NCBI GenBank assembly: GCA_964199315.1
Contig: OZ116700.1
Location: 34,410,001 to 34,474,000, forward strand
Direction of reading: 5' to 3'
Length of the DNA stretch: 64,000 nucleotides
Source: Orbicella franksi
Lineage: Eukaryota
Shown here: positions 223-39,708 of the stretch, piece by piece
How the letters are laid out: every line of letters starts with the position of its first letter
Numbering within the stretch: the first letter of the stretch is position 1
Translations under genes and position numbers: made by a program
The notes under the pieces: model-generated
Told to the model about the DNA's origin: nothing
What the model saw: only the letters and a program-made list of their open reading frames with translations
The model's database searches: none

Positions 223-3200
223 ATGCTTCTGAAACATATGACAATGCAAAGCAGCTACAGGTACAAAGAATATTTTTCACGGAAATCAAACAAAATGAGA
301 GCCTTACTGAGGTGGAATCTAAACAAAATGACAACTGCCCTGCGACGGAAGGCAAAGAAAATGATAAAGTTTCACTGGTGCAAACCCAAGAAGATGATGA
401 CTATATTACGACAGAAACCAAACTAAATGAGGATTGTCCTACACTCAAAACCAAACTGGATGACAGCTTTTCTAGGATCAAACAAAATGAGAACTCTCCT
501 AAAGACCAGGCAAATAAAAGGAATACAAAGAAATTATGTAAAGCCAAGAAAACTACTAAGAAAAGGAGAAACTTAGTGAAAAAATCTCCAGGAATGACTG
601 GTATATTTTCAAGACTTGTTGGGATGCATGGATGTAAGAAACACCAAGGTAATAAGCACGGTATATATGTAGCCATTGTGGTTAACAAAAGAAGATATTA
701 AATAGAGTAGAGAGGCATTGCAAAATGGAACAATTTTTTTGAATGTTACATAACAGTTTAATCCTCTTTGTTACCTCAAGATAAAATAAAGAAAATAAAT
801 ATCTTAACAGACCAGTTTCAAGTTAACTGAGACCAATAGTGACCTGTAAAATTATTTTACTGTTTTCCTGTTTTTGTGACTGTATATGTAATGTCTAATA
901 CTTTCTCTTATCAAATATATAAAATAGTGCTAAATGTTACTTTACAGCAAAAGTACTAAAAGTACTCATGGTCAAATTCTTTTTTACTTCTAGGTCAGCT
1001 ACCAAATTCAAAACAGGCCAAGCCTAAGACCAGTTCACAACAGTCAAAAGACAATTCAAGCAAGTACCTCAGCATACAGAAACTATGTGCAACTTATGCT
1101 CCAAAGAAAACTGACAACAAGAGTAATGCAGCTATTCTTTTACCTCGGGTGTCTAACACCAGTTTAACAACAGACAATAACTCTAGTCGTGTACATAGTA
1201 CACCTTCTTCTCCAAGAAAACATCAGCAAGAACTGGAGTTAAATGTTTCTGTAATTTCTCCACGGTCATCACTGTCACAGAAATTATTGAACTCTGATGA
1301 TGAAAAAGTGAAGAAAGTTTATCTCTCTGATGCACATTCTGGAATGATGACAGGAGTACCATGTGCTCCTCCATGCACACCTACAGTTGGTATGTAGTCA
1401 ATGAACTTTTGGTTCCCTTATCAAGTGTGATAACTGGAGCTGCAGTCTCATTTTCTTGGGGTGGCAAATATATACATCTACAAAGGTCAAGTTGATAAAA
1501 TCTCAAGATTACACACCAGTGGAAAAAACTGTTCAAAAAGTTAAAAACACTAACTGAATCTAAAAACATTATTTTAAAAAAACATTGACAGATTAGAATT
1601 TAAATGATAATCTAAAGAATTAGACTAAGAGGTTGAAACGTTCTCCATGGGGTTGCAGTTCCAGCCGGTGATGGTTCTTGGAAAATATGAATACTTAAAA
1701 ATGTTGTTCTTAGCATATGGTATTTGACATTCTTAGCAGATGGTGCTTAGAAGATCGTTGGTCTAATGATGACAATATTTTCTGTTTTTTGTAATATATG
1801 AATTTGTATTATGCCTTGGAAGTCTGTCCTTAATAAATATCAATTGACTAGTTCTTTCCTGGTGTTTGTTGTTATTTTCTTGACTCTAGATGAACTGAAG
1901 AAAGTTGAATACATCCCTTCATTAACAGATGTCAAGGTACACATGCAAAAAATTTTCCACTGCCTTTTACATAAAAAAATGTCATATTCTTATTTTTAGC
2001 TTTAAAATCGAAGGTTCATTTTCTACCATTCAGTAAGATCTTACTTGATTATATTAATTGTGTTATGTTTCATTACAGAGCCAAAGAGCTGTTAAAGCAA
2101 GGCTTGTTACATTGGGTAAACTGGCACTTTCTAGGAAGCACAATAGGGATCTGGTCTCAGCTACAAAAATTGTAGAAAAAATTGGATCACAACTAAGAAG
2201 TTTCTTTCCCTGAAACGTTACTTGTACTTCATAATTGATAATGAGAAACATTTATGCATTGCCACTGATCAGAGAAACATTTTAGCCAAAAGAAATTTCA
2301 GCTTGTTGCTTAGATGTAAGGTAACTAGCAGCACTAAATTGTCTATGGTTCAATGAAATACATGCATGTTTGTAATATTACAAAATAATGAGGTATGCCT
2401 TTGTGTACATGATTTTTTAGTTTGGTATCAACGTAGTATTAACTTAATCATCACTTTTTACTGGTCTAGGAAATAAAATTAGAGCTGACGAACAGAAAAA
2501 GAAGGAAAAAGCTGCAAAAGAGGAACAGAAAAGAGCTTATGGTGCTATTTTACAGCTTAAACAAAGACAGCGAGCTGAGGTACCATCATGTTATAATAAA
2601 CTTTACTCCAAAGTGGATTAAATAGTTTGAAATTATTGATCTTATGGGTTCTGAATAATTCTTTTGAATAAAGCCATTGGATGTACAGCAGCAATTTGTC
2701 AAACTGCTGATGGCACTGCAATATTTCTTTTTGGTTTGATGTTGACTTTAATCATGTGACCCAATTTTCCAAAAGATGAGTCCGTTGGTGATGAATTTGG
2801 AAAATCTATCCAAAGCAAGCTCAAAAGCGCCAGGAATTTGGCAAAATTAGGATTTTAGGTTTTTTTGTTAAACCATTGACTCCTGTGCTGGCCTTAACCG
2901 GCCGTGACGAGCCTTGGCCTTTCTTCCACTTCTGTCGTCATCACCTTTGACCAAAATTGGCATAATCCATGCTCACTTCTGCAGGAGGAAAAGATCTTTC
3001 CAATGATACCCAGATCAGAGTGTTCAGCCCAATGGAGCCTGAGATATGCACAAAAATGTTCAAAAAGTTGAGTGAAAAGCTCAGAGCAAAATTCCCTGCA
3101 ACTACACGTGGCTACTCCATGGCCAAAACAGAGATTTAAACCCCTTTTGAAGGAAAATAGGGAGACTCTTTTAGTGCCAAAGGCGGCAGCCTCTAGGGGG

Positions 3201-3903
3201 GTCCGGGGCCATGCTCACCAGGAAATTTTGCAAATTTAGATTTTCTTAAATGCCTTTTCCTGCATTTTGGAGCTGCTAAATAGAGTAAGACTGCTGGCCT
3301 GATGAGTCTGCACAACACATGGCGAGAGACTGGGTGAGATGATATGAGAAGAAAGTGTAATACATTGCAAAAAAATACTTAAGATTAGCATTTTTCCCCT
3401 TGTTTTCACAATTTTATTATAAATCAGGAGAATTTGATAAGAATCGGGAGACACATCAGATCGGGAGTCTCCCAATCAAATTGGGAGGGTTGGAATCTCT
3501 GCCAAAATTGCCCATCTCAATGATGCTTTCTCAGAATGTTTTAAACTGGAAGCAAGCCCAGTTGAGGGTCAATCACTGCAGCAAAAATTTTGATTTCTGC
3601 GCATACCCAAGCAAAAATGTCGTAATAAGCGATGCTAGTGGAAAGAAAGGCATGCTGTCATGTTGCAAATGCCTTTTTGAGTAGATTGGAGCTAATTTGG
3701 CCCATATCCAGCCTGAAAATCTCCAAAATGTCCAAAAGATGTGTTTTTGGCAAAAAGCTCCAGGAGTCAATGGGTTGATGTTGACTAATTCTGGTCATCT
3801 GCTTCCACAGATTTATGCTCTGAACAAGGTGATGACAGATCTGGAGAATGAGAACTTTAGAAAATTCATGGAAGAACATTCAGCTGAAACACTTCCTGTG
3901 TAG
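223..3903 (+). CDS. 5'-partial uncharacterised low-complexity protein (>=368 aa) ending in a small vasohibin-binding protein (SVBP/CCDC23)-like motif
   Basis: Frame-consistent GT-AG exons 223-648, 994-1389, 1890-1936, 2079-2115, 2470-2579, 3811-3903 (phases 1,1,0,1,0). Spliced C-terminus ...[42 protein letters not shown] matches remembered human SVBP [20 protein letters not shown] at 18/20. Start codon not found in the window. Confidence 0.8.
2872..3774. mobile_element. piggyBac-like non-autonomous element with nested repeat fragments, in the last intron of the SVBP-motif gene
   Basis: Left TTAA|ACCATTGACTCCTG (2868-2885) and right CAGGAGTCAATGGG|TTGA (3761-3778) form a terminal inverted repeat with TTAA-like flanks; no transposase ORF. 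Confidence 0.6.
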
Positions 3904-8747: not shown

Positions 8748-11512
<2,765 letters not shown>

Positions 11513-15153: not shown

Positions 15154-18370
<3,217 letters not shown>

Positions 18371-29224: not shown

Positions 29225-29345
29225 GCAGTTGAAATAGTAGACGAGCCGAGCTGAACGTGGAACAAAATGGCGTCCAATTCTAAATCCTCTCGTGATCTCT
29301 TGATTTCTGGCGTTCGTCAAAGAATGTAAACATTTGTTGGTGAGT
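29225..29345 (+). promoter_or_regulatory. Putative promoter-proximal first exon of the Roco gene
   Basis: YY1-like AAAATGGCG (29263-29271), GTGAGT donor at 29340-29345, pyrimidine-rich acceptor CCCTTCAG ending at 32085, CCGGAAGT ETS-like motif near 29028. Confidence 0.5.
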
Positions 29346-31208
29346 CAAAGGTTTTCTTGTTTAGTCGTTAGACTAACTGTAAGTTTTTAACGTGAATAAG
29401 GGTCAGCAAGTCGTTTGCGTTCAACCATTTATTGTTTTACGGATTAAAATCTATACGTTTAATTTGTTACCCAATCTCACATAAGGCCATTTGCATTTGT
29501 TATGCCTTTTCGTTTATAGTCTGTGGTATATTGTTAAGTTTAAATTAGACGTGCTACGATTTGGTTTTCTCTGACCCTTATTCCGTCCTCTACACTTTCC
29601 CTCAGGGCTTGAAAGGTTATCTGCTGTAATACAATTCCTTTCGAATGTAAAAGTAAGCTAAAATCTTGCACTGATAAATTGTAAGTGAAACATATGACTC
29701 TCCCTGACCCCTCAATGTAGACTTGCCGGGAAACTCATGTTAATATTGCCAGCACAAAAGCTATCAATCCATGCTATAAATATTCATAATTTCATATGAG
29801 TTATAATTAAACATACTTTCACCATATTTCGCAATTTTAAAATAAAATGTAACATTTTTCCAAGTGATGTCAGACCAAATAGGAAACTATCTGGCTCTCA
29901 TTCACAGTAAAGGCATGGGAGTCAATTAACGTGACTGATCCCATTTCCATAACTTCAATCCAACTCCTATTTGGCTCTTGTGCAGTGTATAGTGCATTTT
30001 TTGCAACCTCATTTGCATAATGGTTAGCACCAAGAAGTCTAGGTTCAAACACTAGTTGGGGTCATTGTGTTTGGTCTTGCAGGGTTGCAGCTAAGAATAT
30101 AGTCTCCTGGTGAAAATTTTCATTGAGCCGGTCACCATTTTTCACGACAGACCTGAAACAAAATTTTCACTCCCAATCTTTTGCAATGCCTTGAATGCAG
30201 GGCTACCAAGCTTAGCGTTTACAAGATGGTGGATGCAGCACACGGAAAGAGAACATACTAAACAAGTGCTCAAAACAAGATTTCATTTCAATTACTTTAC
30301 TTGTTATAGTGGCACCGATACTCAAGGTCAGGAATTGATTCCAAACTCTTCATTTAGTTGATTTAGGTGGTTCGATATGGTTCAGATATCGAATGATTGT
30401 CTGTGCGTAACCTAAAAACCTTTCGCTGTCCTTTCCCAAGTGATTGCCCGCCAAATCCATCCAACAATCACCACTTTCTCAGCCAGAAAATGTTGCCAGC
30501 AGCCGGTGCTTAGCAACAACCCTGGCCTTGGGAAAGACATAGTCTGCACTGGAGCAAAGAATCTCATACTGCTAGATGAGAGCTTAGTGTGGTTTTCATA
30601 ACATTAAACTTCTTGGAGAATCTCTGTTTTTCGTAGATGGGATGAAAGTCCAAGAACATGAGACAGTTTCCCCAATTACTGCTCAATCCAAATTGTGTGG
30701 TTCCAGAAAATATCCATATTCCCCAGGAGGGCTACTAGAAATTCTAAAGAGGAGGGAAGTCACAGAAGCCAACATTTTTTTTTTACAGGAAACTGGAATT
30801 TCTAGAGGGAAAGGGGGGTTCAAACCAAAAATCTCTCCATGGGAAGGGTATGGATACCATTGGTCCACCACATTTGCATATTGAGGAAGGTGACATTTAA
30901 TGTTATGTTCCAAACTGGGGTGGATCAGTCCAACTCCCTAAATGAAAGAAATGCGACATCATAACTCACTGACTTGGCCTCAGAATGCTGGAAACTCCAC
31001 TTCGGAGGACCTAAATTTTAAAAGTTTTACTGGGGAGGATGTCCTCCCACTGGATGTTTTTGCAGTGCAGCATCGAAAACTAGAGTTCTTCTTTCTTTTA
31101 ACGATACTTTTCGAACTGAGAGATAATGATTGTGAATGTAGTGAAAATCATAACAAATACTTTATTTAAGAACTCCAGTAGAAAAAATAAGTCTTATCTC
31201 TGCTTGTC

Positions 31209-31500
31209 AACCAATCAATCAACTTTATTAAAGAGGGTGACACATGACGCTATAAACTGATTTAAATTAGTTGCCCTCTATGCTAAAAATCTACGAGTAA
31301 TTATAAAATAACTAAGTATAGTACAAAGTATGGACAATAAAAAGTTGCAATGAATAAAAAAGTATGTGTATAAACATAATTACAATGATTTAAAAATTCC
31401 TAACTATAACAATTACTATTATTAAAATTAACCTAACTACATACACGCAAAATTATAAAAGAATAAAAGTTAAAATATTAAGAGATTGTAAAATGATCAA
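31209..31500 (-). mobile_element. 3' tail of a 5'-truncated LINE-like retroelement
   Basis: Reverse strand reads AT-rich UTR then AATAAAGTTGATTGATTGG, a poly(A) signal plus GATT microsatellite tail as at 50909-50992. Confidence 0.5.
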
Positions 31501-31509
31501 TATTAGCAG

Positions 31510-31827
31510 CCCCCTTCCCAAAAACCCTTACCCTATCTATGATCAAGAATTTGATATGAACCTATTTATGAACTGATCGTTAAATCCAAGACTGATGTTA
31601 AAGGCATTATGAAGGGCTTTGGTTGATAGACTCGGGTTTATCGATAATGATGAAAAAGTAGCTTCTTCTCAAAAACATACCCAATTCAAGAATAGAGCAC
31701 AAAAACCACACGCTATTTAAGACCAAAATGGCCAAAATCGATACCCTATTTCTGACCAAAAAGGCAAAAGAAAAACATACCCTTTGGCCCGCATATACCT
31801 ATATAGCCCATATAAGGGAGTACTCCC
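31510..31827. repeat. Interspersed repeat ending in GCCCATATAAGGGAGTACTCCCC
   Basis: Recurring ACCCTATTT(A/C)TGACC-type submotifs and a terminus typical of an abundant anthozoan MITE (recalled pattern). Confidence 0.45.
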
Positions 31828-32124
31828 CAGGGATTTAGCCAAGCGGTTACCGTTGCTGAGAACTGGGCCCTGGAGTGAGGGTTGTGGGGGAAAGGTGTCT
31901 TGTATAGAAACTGCTAGGAATGAGTAATGTGGTCTTCTCCACAAGTTTCCTTTCTCGCCCCTCGACTTCAGTAGCCCTGAGAGATGAGGGGGGAGGCATG
32001 AAGGGGTGGGAGAGAATAACTTTGGGAAGACGTTTCTCTTCATTTACTGAAAATCGCACTTTTTTCAATTCATATTTCCCTTCAGTTTCAAGGTGCAATG
32101 CCGTGAAAGAGGAAGGCCTTCACA

Positions 32125-32844
32125 ATGAGAACCGTCAAATGTGTGCTGGTGGGAGACGAAAACGTCGACAAACGGGAATTATTCATCAAGTACATGAGCT
32201 TGTTGAATTCTGAGGTGGAAACAGCGACGGAAACAGAGGAACATGAAAATCCCAACACGGCAAACCAGCTGCATTGCAACGAGTCAACCGATGTTTTTGA
32301 AAACGGAGATGTCGCTCATGTTAATAACAGAGAAGGATCAGACGGTGAAGGAATTCACAACAGTCATCCAAATTTCAGAGTAATCCACCATCGCGATTCG
32401 GAGAACGCCAGTGTGTCGAGCGTAGACCAGGACTCTATCGACCAGTGGTCTGGCACGGTTACCGTAGCCGGCAAACATTACTTTTTGGACCTCCGTGATG
32501 CTCACTGCCAGGAGGCGTTTGACAGCATCCGCCCAGAGGCCTACAATGACACGGACGTTTTTCTTGTGTGTTTTTCTGTTGTACGGTCAAGCTCTTGGGA
32601 GAACGCATTGAACAAGTGGATACCTGAAATTCAGCATTACCGCCCTGTTACCCCGTTCATACTGGTAGGCACCCAGACTGAATGGCGCGACCTGTGGGAT
32701 GAGAAAGACACGTCGAAAAAACCGGTTTTCTCGGTTACAGGAACCGGTTATGCGCAGCAGGTGGGCGCTGTTAAGTATCTAGAATTCGCCACTGGCGACA
32801 ATCACGTCAGAGAGATTCTCAATGCGGCTGTGTTGGTCAGCATC
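32125..32844 (+). other. Degenerate Cdc42-subfamily GTPase domain with a 68-aa insertion (N-terminus of the Roco ORF)
   Basis: Constant +68 residue offset to Cdc42 from D38 to D118; G1 GDENVDKR, G3 DAHCQ, G4 TQTE, G5 EFAT. Confidence 0.85.
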
Positions 32845-35800
32845 ATGGACAGAATGGCACTGTCTACATTTCATCCCGACTTTGACAAAGATGGCTTTAC
32901 TTTGCTTCACCGAGCCGCAAAACTCAATCATATTCCTTCTCTGGAAGCTCTCGTGGACTCCATTGATGTGAACGCCAAGGACAAAGATTTACAAACTGCG
33001 TTAGATATAGCGGTGAAGGAAAACAATTTAAATGCAATACGATTTCTTCTCGAAAGCGGCTGCGAATTTCCCAACCCACCCGACTCTTGGAAGAAATGCT
33101 GCGAGTTCTGGGTCAGTGACGAAGGTGAAGACTCGGAGCGCGTCGTGAATAGCGACATTGCCGAATTCACCCGACAACTGACATTTTTTTACACGACCGC
33201 GTCGCCCCGCCCACTCGCAAGAATTCTTCTGATTGGTCAAAACGGAACGGATGTGGCGAAGTTTGTGAACGAGACTGTGCCGATCTTACCCGTTCGGTCG
33301 CTGACCATTGTGAATTCAGAGGGACCAGCTCTGTTTGACTTTTCGCGTGTCCAGTCTTCTTTAGAATCTCTAACGATGACAAACTGCGATCTCGGTTCTG
33401 CGGAGTTGCCAGGCACCTTGTACACAGTGGCGAGTCTCAAGAGTTTGAGTGTGATTAAATCGGGAGTATCACGGCTTTCTGAACAGCTTGGCGAGCTGAA
33501 AAGTATGCAGCGCCTGCGTTTGAGCGGGAACAAGATTCGGAAACTACCCGACACGATTTCCCGGCTACAGAAGTTGAAATTTGTTCACTGTGATCACAAT
33601 GCGCTGGATAATCTTCCCGATACCCTTGGTTGTTTGGGGTCGCTAGAGGGCCTGGACTTCACTCATAACAAATTGGAGAAACTGTCGGCATCGCTGGGCC
33701 TGCTGACCAATTTGCGAAATCTTTGGTTCGAGAGAAATCGTCTGAAATTTCCGCCCGCTCACATCCTCAACAAAGGAACCGAGAGCATTTTGGAGTTTCT
33801 TAGTGATTTCTTAGACGATCCAGTGGCCAACAATCAGATCAAAATGGTTCTCGTGGGAGGAAGCAAGGTGGGCAAGAGTACACTAGTGAAGGCTCTAAGT
33901 CACTCCAAAGACTGGCGAATTAGCGGAGTCGGTCCAATTTCCAAGACAGATGGGGTCCAGATATCCTCTATGAATCTAATGCGTTCTAAATTGAAAGTAT
34001 TTGACTTGGCAGGGGACGAAGCCTTATTCAGCTCGCATCACTTCTTCCTGTCAGAGAACACTCTTTACCAAGTCGTTTTTGATATGAGCGCGTACACGGT
34101 CAGCAAGACTTCGTTGCAAATTAACCAGCTTGGCAGGTTAGAACTTTGGCTTCAAGTTATCTTCTCTAGAGCTCCGAACTCTCACGTGCTTCTCGTCGGT
34201 ACTCACGCCGACGACCCGAAAATCACCGACGACATACGAACGCGCATTCGTCGAGACATCGAGGCGCTCTTGAGTAAGTATCGTCGTGAGCATAGACGGC
34301 AGTTTGAAGGAGAAGCTGTACCTCAATGTGGCCTTTGCGAAGGGACCCTCATCAGCGAGGGCTCAGCTACTGGCTCGTTTTATGTTCAGGATCAAGGACC
34401 TCCTCATGCTCCTGGTCTCGCGCCTGAACCCTGCATTCCTCACGTAGTAGGCTACTATGAAGTCAGCTGTCAGGGCCAGTTTCCCAAAAACTTCCTCAGT
34501 TCTAAGAATCGGAGCCTGCAGAAGTTTAAAGTGGGGGTGGGCTCCAGCGCCCACATTCTTCTCAGCACGAAAGTCAGTTCCCGTATCCCACAGAAATGCT
34601 TGTACGTGCGGGACAGAATACACGAAATGTGCAACGCAGAGAATGAATTGAAGAACTGGCCGCTTCTTACTTACGACCGCCTGCGCGAGATTGCGCACGG
34701 ATGCGGAGTAAAGCAAGACTTCAAACTCAAGGCTCTCATGACGTATTTTCACTCGCAGGGAGAAATCCTCTGGTACGAAGATATGCCAGGCGTTGGTGAT
34801 GTGATCTTTATTGATCCTTCCTGGTTGTCCAAACAGATGTGTCTTCTCGTCGGCTCGCCTTCTGGCGCCAGCTCGGGACTTGACGGAATATTGCGGATTG
34901 ACAACCTGGCCAAGACTTGGCCTGACGTTCCCGAAGGACAGCGGTTTTCCATGCTGACTTTGTTCAGAGATCTCGGATTGTGTTTCCCTCTTTCCGAGAC
35001 AGAAGATGTTGTTCCATTCCAACTTCCCATCGGCCGACCTGACGAGGACACATGGCCAGGGCAGCCTTCGGAAGATCAGCGGCAGATCAGCTGTGAGTTT
35101 CATTTCAGTTTTCTTCCTCCAACTTTCTTTAGTGACCTCACAGTTGCCATTAACAGGCGGGAGCTGCCGAATAGCTTCGACGTCGAACCAACATTCTACC
35201 GCTTTCACATGGTCTTTGCGACAACGTCCATCGCCAGAATGGGTTGTTCGCTCCATTGTAATGAAATCTCGGCTCATCCTTTGGCAGAGAACCTGAACGT
35301 GCACTGTGTTAGCATCGAAGGTGTCCCGTGCGAGAACAAGTTGAAGGTGATCATACGAGGAAAATTCCCTTGCTGTATTCTTCCTGATGTGAGAGCTGCC
35401 ATCAAGACTGTTGTGGACACGCGCTATCCTGGAATACGCTACATCAGACGGATTGTATGTTCCGCTTGTGAACTCGCGGCGTTCAAGAATCCCGCGCTTC
35501 TGAAAGAACTCGTTAGCGACGGCAGTAACTGTTGTTCGTGGGGGCACATTCTAGGAACCGAAGCGGAAATCGTGGCTGGTGATCTACCTGTAGACCCTGT
35601 TCCGTCTGAGTTACCAGTGAAAGGCGCTATCAGGTCGGGGGTGTTTTTTGGCGAGGCTGGTCAAATCCTAGATGACTGCTACTGCCCCAGGCTTCCTGCG
35701 GTCTTCCCGATCGGTTTTCACAGCGCGCCGTTCAAAAAGCGCCTTCGTGTCAACTCACCAATTAAAGATGGCTACTCAGTACATTTCTTGTGCGAATGTC

Positions 35801-36243
35801 CCGGATATTGGCATTTAACTGAGGGTCCAGGCTTCCGCATACCAAACATCCGAGCATTCCTGGAGGTCTTCGGGGCGCGTGCATGCAAGCTCTTGAAACT
35901 CGCTTTCATGTTGCGAGAGGATGACACTGAGGACGGGTCCAGTGAGTCACGTGTTCCGGTGAAGATCGTCTTGGGTGACGCAAAGTTTCGTGACATCCTC
36001 ATCACGGACATCCAAGATTTGCTAGAACACTACTTCGTGGAATTTCCTGAACTGAAGAATAGCTACATGGGTTTCATGCAAGAGGATTTAGACTTCATGC
36101 AGAGCTACCAAGGAGTCAGCCGTGGTAAGACCTGCAAACTGCTGGAGATCTCACCGGATTGGTGGAGACTGGGTCCGCTTGTCTGCACTTACAACAACCG
36201 GACCAATGAACATCTCTGGCTCTGTGAGAAGCATGCGCTGTAA
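32125..36243 (+). CDS. Single-exon 1372-aa Roco protein: Cdc42-like pseudo-GTPase, 2 ankyrin repeats, LRRs, ROC, COR and Cys/His-rich C-terminus (MFHAS1/MASL1-like core, no kinase)
   Basis: Uninterrupted 4119-nt ORF. aa1-240 Rho-like (MRTVKCVLVGD; [11 protein letters not shown]; KWIPEI; PFILVGTQ; AVKYLE). aa254-314 ankyrin (DKDGFTLLHRAA; DVNAKDKDLQTALDIAV). aa~390-545 LRR (LRLSGNKIRKLP; LDFTHNKLEKL). ROC from aa571 (GGSKVGKST, TDGV, DLAG, THAD, EVSC). COR-like YFHSQGEILWY and FIDPSWL. Confidence 0.9.
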   Translation: MRTVKCVLVGDENVDKRELFIKYMSLLNSEVETATETEEHENPNTANQLHCNESTDVFENGDVAHVNNREGSDGEGIHNSHPNFRVIHHRDSENASVSSVDQDSIDQWSGTVTVAGKHYFLDLRDAHCQEAFDSIRPEAYNDTDVFLVCFSVVRSSSWENALNKWIPEIQHYRPVTPFILVGTQTEWRDLWDEKDTSKKPVFSVTGTGYAQQVGAVKYLEFATGDNHVREILNAAVLVSIMDRMALSTFHPDFDKDGFTLLHRAAKLNHIPSLEALVDSIDVNAKDKDLQTALDIAVKENNLNAIRFLLESGCEFPNPPDSWKKCCEFWVSDEGEDSERVVNSDIAEFTRQLTFFYTTASPRPLARILLIGQNGTDVAKFVNETVPILPVRSLTIVNSEGPALFDFSRVQSSLESLTMTNCDLGSAELPGTLYTVASLKSLSVIKSGVSRLSEQLGELKSMQRLRLSGNKIRKLPDTISRLQKLKFVHCDHNALDNLPDTLGCLGSLEGLDFTHNKLEKLSASLGLLTNLRNLWFERNRLKFPPAHILNKGTESILEFLSDFLDDPVANNQIKMVLVGGSKVGKSTLVKALSHSKDWRISGVGPISKTDGVQISSMNLMRSKLKVFDLAGDEALFSSHHFFLSENTLYQVVFDMSAYTVSKTSLQINQLGRLELWLQVIFSRAPNSHVLLVGTHADDPKITDDIRTRIRRDIEALLSKYRREHRRQFEGEAVPQCGLCEGTLISEGSATGSFYVQDQGPPHAPGLAPEPCIPHVVGYYEVSCQGQFPKNFLSSKNRSLQKFKVGVGSSAHILLSTKVSSRIPQKCLYVRDRIHEMCNAENELKNWPLLTYDRLREIAHGCGVKQDFKLKALMTYFHSQGEILWYEDMPGVGDVIFIDPSWLSKQMCLLVGSPSGASSGLDGILRIDNLAKTWPDVPEGQRFSMLTLFRDLGLCFPLSETEDVVPFQLPIGRPDEDTWPGQPSEDQRQISCEFHFSFLPPTFFSDLTVAINRRELPNSFDVEPTFYRFHMVFATTSIARMGCSLHCNEISAHPLAENLNVHCVSIEGVPCENKLKVIIRGKFPCCILPDVRAAIKTVVDTRYPGIRYIRRIVCSACELAAFKNPALLKELVSDGSNCCSWGHILGTEAEIVAGDLPVDPVPSELPVKGAIRSGVFFGEAGQILDDCYCPRLPAVFPIGFHSAPFKKRLRVNSPIKDGYSVHFLCECPGYWHLTEGPGFRIPNIRAFLEVFGARACKLLKLAFMLREDDTEDGSSESRVPVKIVLGDAKFRDILITDIQDLLEHYFVEFPELKNSYMGFMQEDLDFMQSYQGVSRGKTCKLLEISPDWWRLGPLVCTYNNRTNEHLWLCEKHAL

Positions 36244-36721
36244 GACGAGTTGCATGGACACTTGAAAGGAACAAGTCACGCTACCACACCTTTTATCGGG
36301 CCGCGACTCTGTTTAAATTAATCTTAAATTTGAACGCCATGAATAGCTTAAATAGTTTATATGTGGCCGTTGTTTTTTATCTACTTCAAGGAATATAGAT
36401 ATTCGTAGATGTAACAACTAATGCCAAAGTTTCCAACACGAGGTTCTAAACGGTGACTCTATTTAACAGAGTAGTAAACTTTATAAAGTCACCTGAAAAA
36501 GGGACGATTCTTCCCCGTTACCATAGTCTTTTTTGATAACGTTTTTCAGTTTTTTGTAAATACAAACGTCAACCAGGTCTCCTAGGAACCTCAAAGGAAA
36601 CTTAAAATTCAATAAACACACTATTAGCACTATTAGCACTATTAGCACTGTAGTCACACTATTAGCACGAGCAATTAGCTTTTTCTTTTATTACTCTCGC
36701 TGCATTATTAAGAGGATATTC

Positions 36722-36845
36722 ACGAGTTACCTTCCGCCCTGTGTCAAAGTGAGTCTTCGTGCAAGACTATTCATATCAAACTGTGTTTCATCTGTGTTCA
36801 TTTTACATGAGGACTCGTTTTGAAACAGAGGCAAAAGGCTCTCAT
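36722..36845. mobile_element. Short MITE remnant (GTGTCAAAGTGAGTC...GACTCGTTTTGAAACAGAGGC)
   Basis: Imperfect inverted ends; no ORF. Confidence 0.5.
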
Positions 36846-37291
36846 AGTCGCGGAAATAAGAGCGACCCGCTTAAATATCGCGGACGCAGACATTCCGAAA
36901 AGGTGCATCCCGCTCCGCTCCCTCCGATATTGAATTATTATTCCATCATTGAATTATTATTATTATTATTATACCAAGAATGTTGTCCAGATGAAATGAA
37001 GCTGTATCGTCAACGGTGACGATAGAGGGTATATTTTTCAAAAATTGAATTTGCAAATCGAGTGAGAATTTTGAGCTCATTTTTACGGGTTGAATTTGTA
37101 ATATATTGTTTTTGCAAATATGTTAGTTTTTTAACAAAACGTATTCTTGTAAAGACTTTTGTTTAATACTGAATATTCAGAAATTTCTAGTCATTGTGGA
37201 ATTGTGGGTCAGACAATAGCTTGCAACAATTGATTGCGATTTTTTGAAGTGGTTTGTGGTGTGATTTATGACTTTTATACTTCCCTTCATT

Positions 37292-38847: not shown

Positions 38848-39708
38848 ATGAAAATGAGAATGGTAACCCGAGAACCAGTTGAAGTGATACCAAGGGTGGA
38901 TGTCAAGGATGTTAAAGTTATACGCCTCTTGGGGGCTGGCGGGTTCGGTTCCGTCTTCGAAGCTATGCACAACAATTGCAAAGTAGCCCTAAAGAAATTT
39001 CACACCAACACTCGCAATAAGAAAGCTGCGATGCAGAGCTTTGAGGCCGAGATGCATCACGAAGTCTTGTCTCTCAAGCATCCTCACATCGTCCGTGTTT
39101 TGGCAGCGAACACCGCAAAAACCTTGGAAGACCAGCCTTGTATCATCATGGAGTTTGTAAGCACCAGAAACCTTCAGCATGTTCTTGACGACGCCGACGA
39201 AAAGATCGATTTTAAACGACGCGTTCGGTTTGCATATGAGGTGGCTCTGGCGCTGGAATATGTGCATAGCAATAACATCGCACATCTCGACTTGAAACCT
39301 GCCAACGTTCTGATTGCGCAGGATGATAGCTGCAAACTCGCCGACTTCGGGTGTTGTCAGATCATCCAGGAACGACCCAACACCCCCTCCAGATCGTACC
39401 TCACCGGAACTTTTGCCTACCGGGCACCGGAGCTTCTTAAAGGAGAAAGCCCAACTTTCAAGGCTGATGTTTTTTCACTCGGGATCTGCTTGTGGCAATT
39501 CTGGACGCGAGAAATTCCGTACAAGTTGCAAAATCACCAGATTGTGATCTTTCAAGTTGTAGCCTGCAATTTGCGTCCGCCGATCCCCAAGGGGAATGAC
39601 GTCGACAACCGGTACAGGGAACTGATAACGTCATCGTGGTCCGGTAACCCTAGTGACCGTCCTTGCATGCCAGAAGTCGTGAACTTGTTGAAGAGTCTCC
39701 GTCCTTGA
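38848..39708 (+). CDS. MOS: Mos serine/threonine kinase (MAPKKK), intronless, 286 aa
   Basis: LGAGGFGSV, VALKK, HLDLKPAN (HLD rather than HRD), DFGC, GTFAYRAPELLKGE, KADVFSLGICLWQ..REIPY form the Mos signature set; lack of introns is typical of Mos genes. Confidence 0.92.
   Translation: MKMRMVTREPVEVIPRVDVKDVKVIRLLGAGGFGSVFEAMHNNCKVALKKFHTNTRNKKAAMQSFEAEMHHEVLSLKHPHIVRVLAANTAKTLEDQPCIIMEFVSTRNLQHVLDDADEKIDFKRRVRFAYEVALALEYVHSNNIAHLDLKPANVLIAQDDSCKLADFGCCQIIQERPNTPSRSYLTGTFAYRAPELLKGESPTFKADVFSLGICLWQFWTREIPYKLQNHQIVIFQVVACNLRPPIPKGNDVDNRYRELITSSWSGNPSDRPCMPEVVNLLKSLRP

What the first reader, a model, noticed from the sequence alone, without database searches (positions are those of the whole stretch)
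32125..32844. The Rho-like domain is degenerate at every G-motif: pseudo-GTPase, possibly an integrated decoy
Seen, aligned to the local Cdc42: G12>E, G15>D, T17>R, Y32>V, T35>D, T58>A, A59>H, G60>C, D118>E, CSA>FAT. The hydrophobic core ([23 protein letters not shown]) is retained. Known: T17 and T35 coordinate Mg2+; Rho GTPases are targets of bacterial effectors (Vibrio VopS AMPylates switch-I Thr35); plant NLRs use integrated decoy domains; MFHAS1 is linked to innate immune signalling. Inference only: a nucleotide-insensitive bait or scaffold for GEFs, GAPs or toxins that reports to the LRR-ROC-COR module.
Basis: partly seen in the sequence, partly recalled or inferred. Interest (0 to 1): 0.75.

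Follow-up and report, generated by a model that had tools for sequence, protein, structure and literature searches.

The report
Dead Cdc42-like domain on coral ROCO protein
A stony-coral signalling protein of the ROCO family (relatives of the Parkinson's protein LRRK2) starts with a copy of the Cdc42 switch domain that has lost all its GTP-binding motifs yet has been strictly conserved across reef corals, so it is a working "pseudo-GTPase", and nothing found here supports the idea that it is an immune decoy.

Summary
Window 32125-32844 encodes residues 1-240 of one uninterrupted 1372-aa ORF (32125-36243, +). The domain order is Cdc42-like domain, ANK, LRR, ROC, COR-A/B, then an unassigned Cys/His-rich C-terminal domain. 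There is no kinase.

All five G motifs are damaged:
- P-loop GDGAVGKT has become GDENVDKR.
- DTAGQE has become DAHCQE.
- TQID has become TQTE.
- CSAL has become FATG.
- Switch I is replaced by an insert of about 70-80 aa that is predicted to be disordered.

Two of the ten listed substitutions (Y32>V, T35>D) depend on where the insert is placed in the alignment.

The domain is not decaying. Orthologues of about 1370 aa occur in both deep coral clades, and they keep the damaged motifs invariant. ML omega for the Rho-like core is 0.10, against 0.13 for the intact ROC domain and 0.29 for the insert. The gene is single-copy, syntenic and present in poly-A RNA. AlphaFold2 predicts a Rho-type fold.

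A hemichordate homologue of the same architecture keeps Cdc42 intron positions. Only its P-loop is broken.

Best reading: a nucleotide-independent (class-i-like) pseudoGTPase that serves as a structural or docking module. The decoy idea is not supported. Toxin-target residues are lost or variable, and there is no sign of an arms race. This is a new variant of known kinds. Interest is moderate.

The parts
29309..29339 (+). 3' end of the non-coding first exon (5' UTR). RNA contigs carry at least 258 nt upstream of the junction.
   Evidence: The loose-end consensus of RNA contigs at 32085 matches 29309-29338. The donor GT is at 29340.
29340..32085 (+). 5'-UTR intron (GT..AG), the only intron seen in this gene
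32125..32199 (+). Pseudo-Rho residues 1-25: strand beta1, dead P-loop GDENVDKR (32152-32175) and the start of helix alpha1. This is the most conserved stretch of the domain (16 of 25 residues invariant).
32200..32436 (+). Insert, residues 26-104, replacing switch I. It is acidic and Ser-rich and predicted to be disordered from residue 39 to 103. It has three conserved islands: F58-x-N-G-D (32296-32310), HPNFRVIH (32365-32388) and SVSSxDxD (32410-32433). It lies at the position of Cdc42 intron 1.
   Evidence: omega 0.29
32437..32844 (+). Pseudo-Rho core, residues 105-240 (beta2 to alpha5). It carries dead G3 DAHCQE (32497-32514), G4 TQTE (32671-32682), G5 FATG (32785-32796) and a Rho insert shortened by about 4 residues.
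   Evidence: omega 0.10
32851..33102 (+). Ankyrin repeats (about residues 243-326)
   Evidence: Pfam Ank_2/Ank; helices in the AF2 model
33292..33744 (+). Leucine-rich repeats (residues 390-540)
   Evidence: Pfam LRR_14, E=2.5e-17
33841..34212 (+). ROC G domain (residues 573-696) with intact GxxxxGKS, DxxG and THxD motifs. This is presumably the real switch.
   Evidence: Pfam Roc, E=3e-20; LRRK2/LRRK1 ROC, E=7e-14; sequence
34603..35478 (+). COR-A (residues 827-960) and COR-B (986-1118, below the Pfam cut-off)
35485..36243 (+). C-terminal Cys/His-rich domain (residues 1121-1372) plus the stop codon. It is family-specific and has no solved-structure match.
36244..36943 (+). 3' UTR, up to the end of the RNA contigs
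   Evidence: table 8

Best explanation
Residues 1-240 form a Cdc42-derived pseudoGTPase domain. It keeps the Rho fold but can no longer bind or hydrolyse GTP in the canonical way, which is class-i-like behaviour.

It is a selected, functional part of an expressed single-copy coral ROCO protein with the order pseudoRho-ANK-LRR-ROC-COR-C-terminal domain. The intact ROC domain is the real nucleotide switch in that protein.

The dead domain most likely works as a nucleotide-independent structural or docking module. It would either hold the N-terminal ANK-LRR arm in place or recruit a partner. Switch I has been replaced by a disordered acidic, Ser-rich loop that carries three conserved short motifs. 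That loop is the likely regulated or binding element.

Shown here: motif loss, conservation, purifying selection, transcription, predicted fold and Cdc42 descent. Inferred only: absence of nucleotide binding, and the docking or regulatory role.
For: Motif loss:
- All five G motifs are lost, and acidic residues sit at both P-loop glycine positions, E12 and D15.
- Cdc42 G15A alone is used as the standard nucleotide-free mutant (PMC12644026).

Conservation and selection:
- The damaged states are invariant in 14 orthologues from Acropora, Montipora, Porites, Pocillopora, Oculina, Desmophyllum and others: G10 D11 V14 D15 K16, D125 A126 C128, T183 E186.
- Pairwise dN/dS for the Rho core is 0.04-0.10.
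- ML omega: Rho core 0.103, ROC 0.128, LRR 0.100, insert 0.291.
- The gene is single-copy with conserved PRS7-ROCO-kinase-vigilin synteny.

Expression:
- Poly-A RNA contigs from three runs of three studies cover 32085-36943 without a joint.
- An in-frame stop lies upstream of the ATG.

Fold:
- The AF2 model has pLDDT above 85 over most of the G-domain core.
- Foldseek top hits are Rac, Cdc42 and ROP, with TM by target 0.78-0.86.

Descent:
- Cdc42 scores above Rac, which scores above RhoA.
- The Glandiceps homologue P0238 aligns end to end, and its Rho-like exons keep all three Cdc42 intron positions.
Against: - No biochemistry was done. Loss of nucleotide binding is inferred from sequence only.
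- K16, D57 and G10 are retained, and T35 may be retained under one alignment.
- The strong conservation of the dead P-loop (16 of 25 residues invariant) shows that it does something specific, and a plain 'scaffold' label does not explain that.
Confidence: 0.65

Rival explanations
1. Integrated decoy. The Cdc42-like domain would mimic a host Rho GTPase so that bacterial toxins or effectors modify or bind it, and the LRR-ROC-COR module would report the event.
For: - The architecture, an extra target-like domain on an NTPase-LRR protein, resembles plant NLR-ID receptors.
- Rho GTPases are guarded in mammals by pyrin (PMC6698799 and PMC11781737, listed).
- An unrelated Rho-ROC-COR fusion, P0370, ends in a TIR domain.
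- The C-terminal domain has weak structural look-alikes in TIR-, ART- and COR-containing proteins.
Against: - The residues that known Rho toxins act on are missing or variable. The switch-I loop is replaced by a disordered insert, Q61 varies as Q/E/H/Y/N, and there is no polybasic-CAAX tail. Which toxin acts on which residue is my own knowledge, not checked here.
- There is no arms-race signature. Omega is 0.10, the gene is single-copy, orthology is 1:1, and synteny is conserved across the complex/robust split.
- No expression data under infection were found.
Confidence: 0.1
2. GEF trap or adaptor. The domain would act as a built-in nucleotide-free Cdc42 mimic, comparable to the G15A and T17N mutants. 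It would bind Cdc42/Rac exchange factors tightly and so tether the ROCO protein to Rho-GEF signalling or sequester GEFs.
For: - G15 and T17 are both substituted.
- Cdc42 G15A, Rac1 G15A and RhoA G17A are the standard nucleotide-free baits for GEFs (PMC12644026; PMC4905258, listed).
- Parts of switch II and the beta2-beta3 region stay conserved: D125, D133, I135, R136, Y140, W108.
- In four Rho+ROC-COR proteins the P-loop is always the motif that is broken.
Against: - Switch I, a major GEF contact (own knowledge), is replaced.
- A59, G60 and Q61 are changed.
- No GEF candidate was tested.
Confidence: 0.1
3. Atypical but live nucleotide binder. Under this reading it would be a class ii/iii pseudoGTPase or a non-canonical GTPase. 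It would bind GTP, GDP or another nucleotide through a remodelled pocket, giving the protein two switches.
For: - K16, D57, G10 and T115 are retained.
- The P-loop segment is the most conserved part of the domain.
- Atypical Rho proteins with altered motifs still bind GTP (PMC13236570, listed; its abstract only).
Against: - Two acidic side chains sit in the P-loop.
- There is no Ser/Thr at position 17 for Mg2+.
- G60 is lost.
- The NKxD Asp is replaced by Glu, and SAK/SAL is lost.
- All of these are conserved.
Confidence: 0.1
4. Neutral relic. The domain would be a decaying leftover of a gene fusion with no function.
For: Motif loss alone would fit this reading.
Against: - Omega is 0.10 for the core.
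- Seventy-one of the 162 residues outside the insert (1-25 and 104-240) are invariant.
- The domain is retained at full length in every orthologue found.
Confidence: 0.02

Closest known systems
Cdc42 (Rho family small GTPase), including the two genuine Cdc42 genes in this window
   Same: It is the best sequence match (E=2e-31; 41-44% identity to the local copies). It shares a Rho-type fold with a Rho insert. It also shares Cdc42-specific residues: T3, TQ in G4, and the PEI and TPF strings.
   Different: G1 to G5 are all damaged. Switch I is replaced by an insert of about 70-80 aa. There is no CAAX or polybasic tail. The domain is fused to about 1130 further residues.
pseudoGTPase domains, e.g. 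p190RhoGAP pG1/pG2 (PMC5593906) and the class-i pseudoGTPase of AAGAB (PMC12490416)
   Same: Each is a G-domain fold inside a larger protein, lacks the G motifs, is evolutionarily conserved, and is used for protein-protein contacts instead of switching.
   Different: Here the ancestry is still plainly readable as Cdc42. The host protein is a ROCO GTPase. The absence of nucleotide binding is only inferred.
ROCO proteins: MFHAS1 (LRR-ROC-COR) and LRRK1/LRRK2 (ANK-LRR-ROC-COR-kinase-WD40)
   Same: It has the ANK-LRR-ROC-COR core. Its ROC domain is homologous to LRRK2 ROC (E=7e-14).
   Different: There is no kinase or WD40. It has an N-terminal dead Rho domain and a distinct Cys/His-rich C-terminal domain. 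The ROCO review PMC6337361 does not mention Cdc42 and does not describe a Rho-like G domain.
Glandiceps talaboti XP_077978787.1 (P0238), a hemichordate homologue
   Same: It has the same order of domains and aligns over residues 114-1372 at 28% identity. It shares the G15>D, I117>T and H104>Y changes.
   Different: Its Rho-like domain is 62% identical to Cdc42. It has no insert, and switch I, G3, G4 and G5 are intact. It is still split by the three Cdc42 introns. It is a predicted gene model only.
Plant NLR integrated-decoy receptors
   Same: A domain resembling a pathogen target is fused to an NTPase-LRR chassis.
   Different: No rapid evolution, copy-number variation or retention of target residues is seen here. 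ROC-COR is not an NB-ARC or NACHT module.
Atypical Rho proteins (Rnd, RhoH, RhoBTB)
   Same: They are Rho-family members with altered catalytic residues. RhoBTB is also multidomain.
   Different: From my own knowledge, those proteins keep the P-loop glycines and bind GTP. This domain has lost all of the binding motifs.

Membership tests
Rho-family GTPase (Cdc42 subfamily) | Significant sequence similarity and a Rho-type G fold with a Rho insert | tested here: met
   E=1.9e-31 to Cdc42. Foldseek hits Rac and Cdc42 with TM by target 0.78-0.86. The Rho insert is present but about 4 residues shorter.
Rho-family GTPase (Cdc42 subfamily) | Intact G1 (GxxxxGK[ST]), G2 Thr35, G3 (DxxG), G4 ([NT][KQ]xD) and G5 (SA[KL]) | tested here: not met
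   The motifs read GDENVDKR, switch I replaced, DAHC, TQTE and FATG.
Rho-family GTPase (Cdc42 subfamily) | C-terminal CAAX box for prenylation | tested here: not met
   The domain runs straight into the ankyrin repeats.
pseudoGTPase, class i (no nucleotide binding, no hydrolysis) | G-domain fold retained | tested here: met
   AF2 model and Foldseek search. This is a prediction, not a solved structure.
pseudoGTPase, class i (no nucleotide binding, no hydrolysis) | Loss of the conserved G-motif residues | tested here: met
pseudoGTPase, class i (no nucleotide binding, no hydrolysis) | Evolutionary conservation, meaning a functional domain and not a pseudogene | tested here: met
   Omega is 0.10. 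Orthologues occur in both coral clades. The gene is transcribed.
pseudoGTPase, class i (no nucleotide binding, no hydrolysis) | Experimentally shown lack of GTP/GDP binding and hydrolysis | not testable with these tools
   This needs purified protein and assays such as mant-nucleotide binding, DSF and a GTPase assay.
ROCO protein family | ROC G domain immediately followed by a COR domain | tested here: met
   Pfam Roc 3e-20, COR-A 1.6e-15, and COR-B 2.2e-5 (below cut-off). LRRK2 ROC E=7e-14.
ROCO protein family | LRR region N-terminal of ROC | tested here: met
   Pfam LRR_14, 2.5e-17, at residues 390-536.
LRRK-type ROCO (group 2) | Kinase domain C-terminal of COR | tested here: not met
   There is no kinase hit in the ORF. 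The kinase ORF 2.6 kb downstream is much more conserved (89% amino-acid identity to Desmophyllum). The Desmophyllum and Acropora records call it as a separate gene. I therefore treat it as a separate gene.
Integrated-decoy immune receptor | The decoy keeps the surface or residues that the pathogen effector targets | tested here: not met
   Switch I is replaced, Q61 is variable, and there is no C-terminal tail. Target-residue assignments are from general knowledge.
Integrated-decoy immune receptor | Signs of host-pathogen conflict: fast evolution, copy-number or presence/absence variation | tested here: not met
   Omega is 0.10. The gene is single-copy, syntenic and has 1:1 orthologues.
Integrated-decoy immune receptor | Effector-dependent activation of the receptor | not testable with these tools
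   This needs infection or effector assays.

The most novel reading that the evidence does not exclude
Cdc42-type G domains have been captured at the N-terminus of ROC-COR proteins in at least three independent lineages:
- the coral/hemichordate family;
- the sponge Dysidea protein P0336;
- P0370, a TIR-ending ROCO from an unidentified eukaryote.

In all four proteins examined the P-loop is broken:
- GDENVDKR in corals;
- GDHDADKT in Glandiceps;
- GD-CVGKS in Dysidea;
- GDKVNGVKT in P0370.

This would mean that ROC-COR machines repeatedly recruit a permanently nucleotide-free Rho module. It could act as a cis partner for the ROC domain, or as a built-in trap or adaptor for Rho exchange factors. 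That would be a general design principle linking Rho signalling to ROCO switches.
Probability: 0.15. Interest if true: 0.75.

Novelty: new variant of a known kind. Interest (0 to 1): 0.5.

Why it matters
ROCO proteins are studied intensively because of LRRK2, and pseudoGTPases are a recently recognised class with few worked examples. This is a naturally occurring ROCO protein that carries a live G domain (ROC) and a dead, Cdc42-derived G domain in one chain. Its ancestry is unusually clear, and a less degenerate form survives in a hemichordate. Together they offer a graded series for asking what a G fold does once it stops binding nucleotide. They also offer a way to ask how the N-terminal arm of a ROCO protein talks to ROC-COR.

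For coral biology, this is a deeply conserved single-copy signalling gene with no assigned function. The result also cautions against reading every target-like fused domain as an immune decoy.

Tried and rejected
- **Complex prediction**, pseudoRho 1-245 against ROC-COR 560-1120. The job was counted but not folded.
- **ML tree of Rho domains**. The coral clade sits on a branch of length 1.6 and the deep forks are unresolved. Cdc42 descent therefore rests on best-hit scores and signature residues, not on the tree.
- **Common origin of the coral and Glandiceps Rho domains.** This is suggested only by identical architecture and three shared substitutions. It is not demonstrated.
- **Neutral decay.** Rejected.
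- **Read-through to the kinase gene downstream.** Rejected. There is a stop at 36241-36243, RNA contigs end near 36943, and the kinase is much more conserved.
- **Alternative upstream start.** Rejected, because an in-frame TGA lies at 32104-32106 inside the coding exon.
- **Fold searches of the C-terminal domain.** PDB gave Z of 4.2 or less, Swiss-Prot models gave E of 0.3 or more, and the ESM Atlas gave TM of 0.31 or less. None gave a usable match.
- **Literature searches.** ROCO plus pseudoGTPase returned nothing, and neither did the NCBI locus names of the orthologues.
- **Look-ups that failed.** P0070 is not on record. P0254 returned no DNA. The unnamed ENA homologues could not be assigned to taxa. 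I therefore could not establish whether sea anemones, corallimorphs or octocorals have the Rho-like domain.
- **Raw-read run X24.** Only 2 reads were laid, so transcript ends and strand rest on Logan contigs.

Full report
**What is there**

The window is a piece of a stony-coral chromosome (G000:C3). The nearest named orthologues come from Oculina, Desmophyllum, Pocillopora, Porites, Montipora and Acropora.

Positions 32125-36243 (+) form one uninterrupted ORF of 1372 aa. Pfam finds these domains:
- Ras/Rho, split into two pieces, at residues 1-233;
- ankyrin repeats at 251-315;
- LRR at 390-540;
- Roc at 573-696;
- COR-A at 827-960;
- COR-B at 986-1118, below the cut-off.

Nothing is assigned to the last 250 residues, and there is no kinase. 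The ROC domain is homologous to that of LRRK2 (E=7e-14). It keeps GxxxxGKS, DxxG and THxD. The protein is therefore a ROCO protein with one apparently live G domain.

**The observation**

Residues 1-240 match human Cdc42 at E=1.9e-31. They are 41-44% identical to the two genuine Cdc42 genes that lie 14-23 kb upstream in the same window. Cdc42 scores above Rac-like proteins, which score above RhoA, for every coral orthologue.

- GDGAVGKT has become GDENVDKR.
- DTAGQE has become DAHCQE.
- TQID has become TQTE.
- CSAL has become FATG.

K16 and D57 are kept, and Q61 is kept in this species. The hydrophobic core strings are intact.

Because of this, Y32>V and T35>D depend on how the insert is placed. 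Counting from the N-terminal side gives E32 and a retained, nearly invariant T35.

AlphaFold2 was run on residues 1-335 with 35 aligned sequences (mean pLDDT 76, pTM 0.73). It predicts:
- a normal G-domain sheet and helices;
- helix alpha1 extended to residue 39;
- residues 39-103 disordered;
- ankyrin helices following directly.

Foldseek returns Rac, Cdc42 and ROP structures, with TM by target 0.78-0.86.

**Is it alive or decaying?**

A search restricted to long proteins found 16 cluster representatives of 1368-1379 aa with the same Pfam set, 59-98% identical over the N-terminus. They include both deep scleractinian clades. The split between those clades is dated to at least 245 My in PMC5730576 (abstract).

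In 14 aligned sequences the damaged states themselves are invariant or nearly so:
- G10 D11 [E/D] [N/D] V14 D15 K16 [R/K/Q];
- D125 A126 x C128;
- T183 [Q/H] [T/I] E186.

Residues 1-25 are the most conserved stretch of the domain, with 16 of 25 invariant.

I fetched eight orthologous coding sequences, all intronless. Pairwise NG86 dN/dS for the Rho-like core is 0.04-0.10. A GY codon model on the nine-species tree gives these omega values:

| Region | Omega |
|---|---|
| Rho core | 0.103 |
| Insert | 0.291 |
| ANK | 0.149 |
| LRR | 0.100 |
| ROC | 0.128 |
| COR | 0.081 |
| C-terminal domain | 0.120 |

The dead domain is thus as constrained as the live one. The insert is looser, but it keeps three conserved islands: F-x-N-G-D, HPNFRVIH and SVSSxDxD.

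The gene is single-copy in this genome. It sits in a conserved PRS7-ROCO-kinase-vigilin neighbourhood that is shared with Desmophyllum and Acropora.

**Expression and gene model**

Twenty indexed public runs from 12 studies hold most of the stretch, and 14 of those runs are on record as RNA. Contigs from three poly-A or cDNA runs cover 32085-36943 without any joint.

Upstream of 32085 the contigs continue into sequence that matches 29309-29338. This defines a non-coding first exon and a GT-AG intron at 29340-32085. An in-frame TGA at 32104-32106 fixes the ATG at 32125. The Rho-like domain is therefore part of the mature message and of the protein.

**Origin**

A profile search of 1.8 billion representatives returned coral fragments and then ordinary Rho proteins. 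It also returned one long protein of the same architecture, P0238 from the hemichordate Glandiceps talaboti. P0238 aligns with the coral protein over residues 114-1372. It shares the C-terminal domain that also marks Rho-less relatives in Saccoglossus, Ptychodera, Clytia and unnamed marine eukaryotes.

Its Rho-like domain is 62% identical to Cdc42 and has no insert. YIPTVFD, DTAGQED, TNTD and CSAR are intact, but its P-loop is broken (GDHDADKT). It shares G15>D, I117>T and H104>Y with the corals.

In the Glandiceps genome this domain is split by introns after T35, G60 and K96, in Cdc42 numbering. These are exactly the intron positions of the window's Cdc42 genes. The remaining 1070 residues are one exon.

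This fits a fusion of a Cdc42 gene copy onto an intronless ANK-LRR-ROC-COR gene. In corals, intron loss and far deeper degeneration would have followed. The coral insert lies at the position of Cdc42 intron 1, so exonisation of that intron is a plausible source. This is inference only.

Whether the coral and hemichordate fusions are one event is not proven, and the Glandiceps protein is a predicted model.

Two further Rho+ROC-COR proteins share only the Rho part with the coral protein, so they are independent fusions:
- **Sponge Dysidea P0336:** 74% identical to Cdc42, with a one-residue P-loop deletion, T35>R, and G3 changed.
- **P0370, which ends in a TIR domain:** a P-loop insertion, G60>N, and D118>E.

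Their P-loops are also non-canonical.

**Mechanism**

Two carboxylates sit at the P-loop glycine positions. There is no hydroxyl at position 17 for Mg2+, G60 is lost, the guanine-specificity Asp is replaced by Glu, and the SAK-type motif is gone. Canonical GTP or GDP binding is therefore very unlikely. A single G15A change is enough to make Cdc42 nucleotide-free in standard use (PMC12644026).

This matches the definition of a class-i pseudoGTPase, one that is incompetent for binding and hydrolysis (PMC12490416). It also parallels the pseudoGTPase domains of p190RhoGAP (PMC5593906).

I therefore read the domain as a nucleotide-independent structural or docking module. ROC would be the real switch, and the disordered loop with its conserved motifs would be the probable regulated element. 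The extreme conservation of the dead P-loop says it has acquired a specific new role, which I cannot identify.

**The decoy idea**

A decoy should keep what the pathogen recognises, and it usually shows signs of conflict. Here:
- the switch-I loop is gone;
- Q61 varies among corals;
- the lipidated tail is absent;
- omega is low and uniform;
- the gene is single-copy, syntenic and 1:1 across corals.

The hints in its favour are indirect. One unrelated Rho-ROCO protein ends in TIR. The C-terminal domain has weak AlphaFold-DB look-alikes in COR-, LRR-, TIR- and ART-containing proteins of fungi, algae and rotifers.

I give the decoy reading about 0.1. I give a similar weight to a GEF-trap reading that builds on the nucleotide-free mimicry.

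**Novelty**

I found no paper that combines ROCO with pseudoGTPase. The ROCO review PMC6337361 does not mention Cdc42 and describes no Rho-like G domain in any ROCO protein. None of the orthologues' locus names appears in the library.

Database names for the orthologues are 'uncharacterized', 'Cdc42-like' or an automatic 'kinase' label.

I class this as a new variant of known kinds, namely a pseudoGTPase inside a ROCO protein. Interest is moderate. It would be higher if the recurrent Rho-ROCO pattern proves to be a general design.

Noticed in passing
window 8790-11512 and 15175-18370 (+): There are two tandem, apparently intact Cdc42 genes of four coding exons each. They are 93% identical to each other and have canonical G motifs and CAAX ends (CSLL and CTLL). 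Exons of copy A are 8790-8894, 10334-10408, 10792-10899 and 11225-11509. Exons of copy B are 15175-15279, 17012-17086, 17842-17949 and 18083-18367. They lie on the same strand as the ROCO gene and upstream of it.
   Followed up: partly
window 38848-39708 (+): A single-exon 286-aa protein-kinase ORF lies 2.6 kb downstream of the ROCO stop. It is 89% identical to the Desmophyllum neighbour and 77% to the Acropora one. The order PRS7 (about 25.3-28.2 kb), ROCO, kinase, vigilin (from about 41.2 kb) is conserved. I did not identify which kinase it is.
   Followed up: partly
window 35485-36240 (+), residues 1121-1372: This is a conserved C-terminal domain with invariant Cys and His residues: C12, C37, H41, H120, C123, H130, C267 and H270 of alignment A3. 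It is shared by Rho-less relatives in hemichordates and hydrozoans. It has no solved-structure match (Z of 4.2 or less). It has weak AlphaFold-DB look-alikes in COR-, LRR-, TIR- and ART-containing proteins of fungi, green algae and rotifers. The C-terminus of Arabidopsis TORNADO1 also appears, at a non-significant E of 1.
   Followed up: partly
window 29267-29329 and 32098-32106 (+): The 5' UTR holds two upstream ORFs. One has 20 codons and lies in exon 1. The other is a minimal ATG-CCG-TGA in exon 2, in frame with the main ATG and 27 nt ahead of it.
   Followed up: no
window 31497-31890: This stretch inside the 5'-UTR intron has k-mer depth of about 320-3900 in the three contig-based RNA runs laid, against about 4-28 over the gene. 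It also has many loose ends. It looks like a highly expressed interspersed repeat.
   Followed up: no
G000:C11:23.21-23.25 Mb (loci L003, L004, L006, L007, L009, L010, L012): This is a cluster of at least eight intact intronless Rho-like ORFs of 196-217 aa on both strands, plus one frame with internal stops at 23226022. The two I translated (L003 and L004) are RhoA-like, and L004 already has an altered P-loop and G3 (GDSSCGKT, DTVGDE).
   Followed up: no
proteins P0336 (Dysidea avara) and P0370 (unnamed ENA contig): These are independent fusions of a Cdc42-like domain to ROC-COR. One is in a sponge. The other ends in a TIR domain. Both have non-canonical P-loops.
   Followed up: partly
protein P0163 (188 aa, unnamed ENA contig): This is a free-standing Rho-like protein with a CAAX end. 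Its P-loop, GDKEADKTEL, resembles those of the coral and Glandiceps ROCO domains, sharing G15>D and C18>E. Its source organism is unknown.
   Followed up: no
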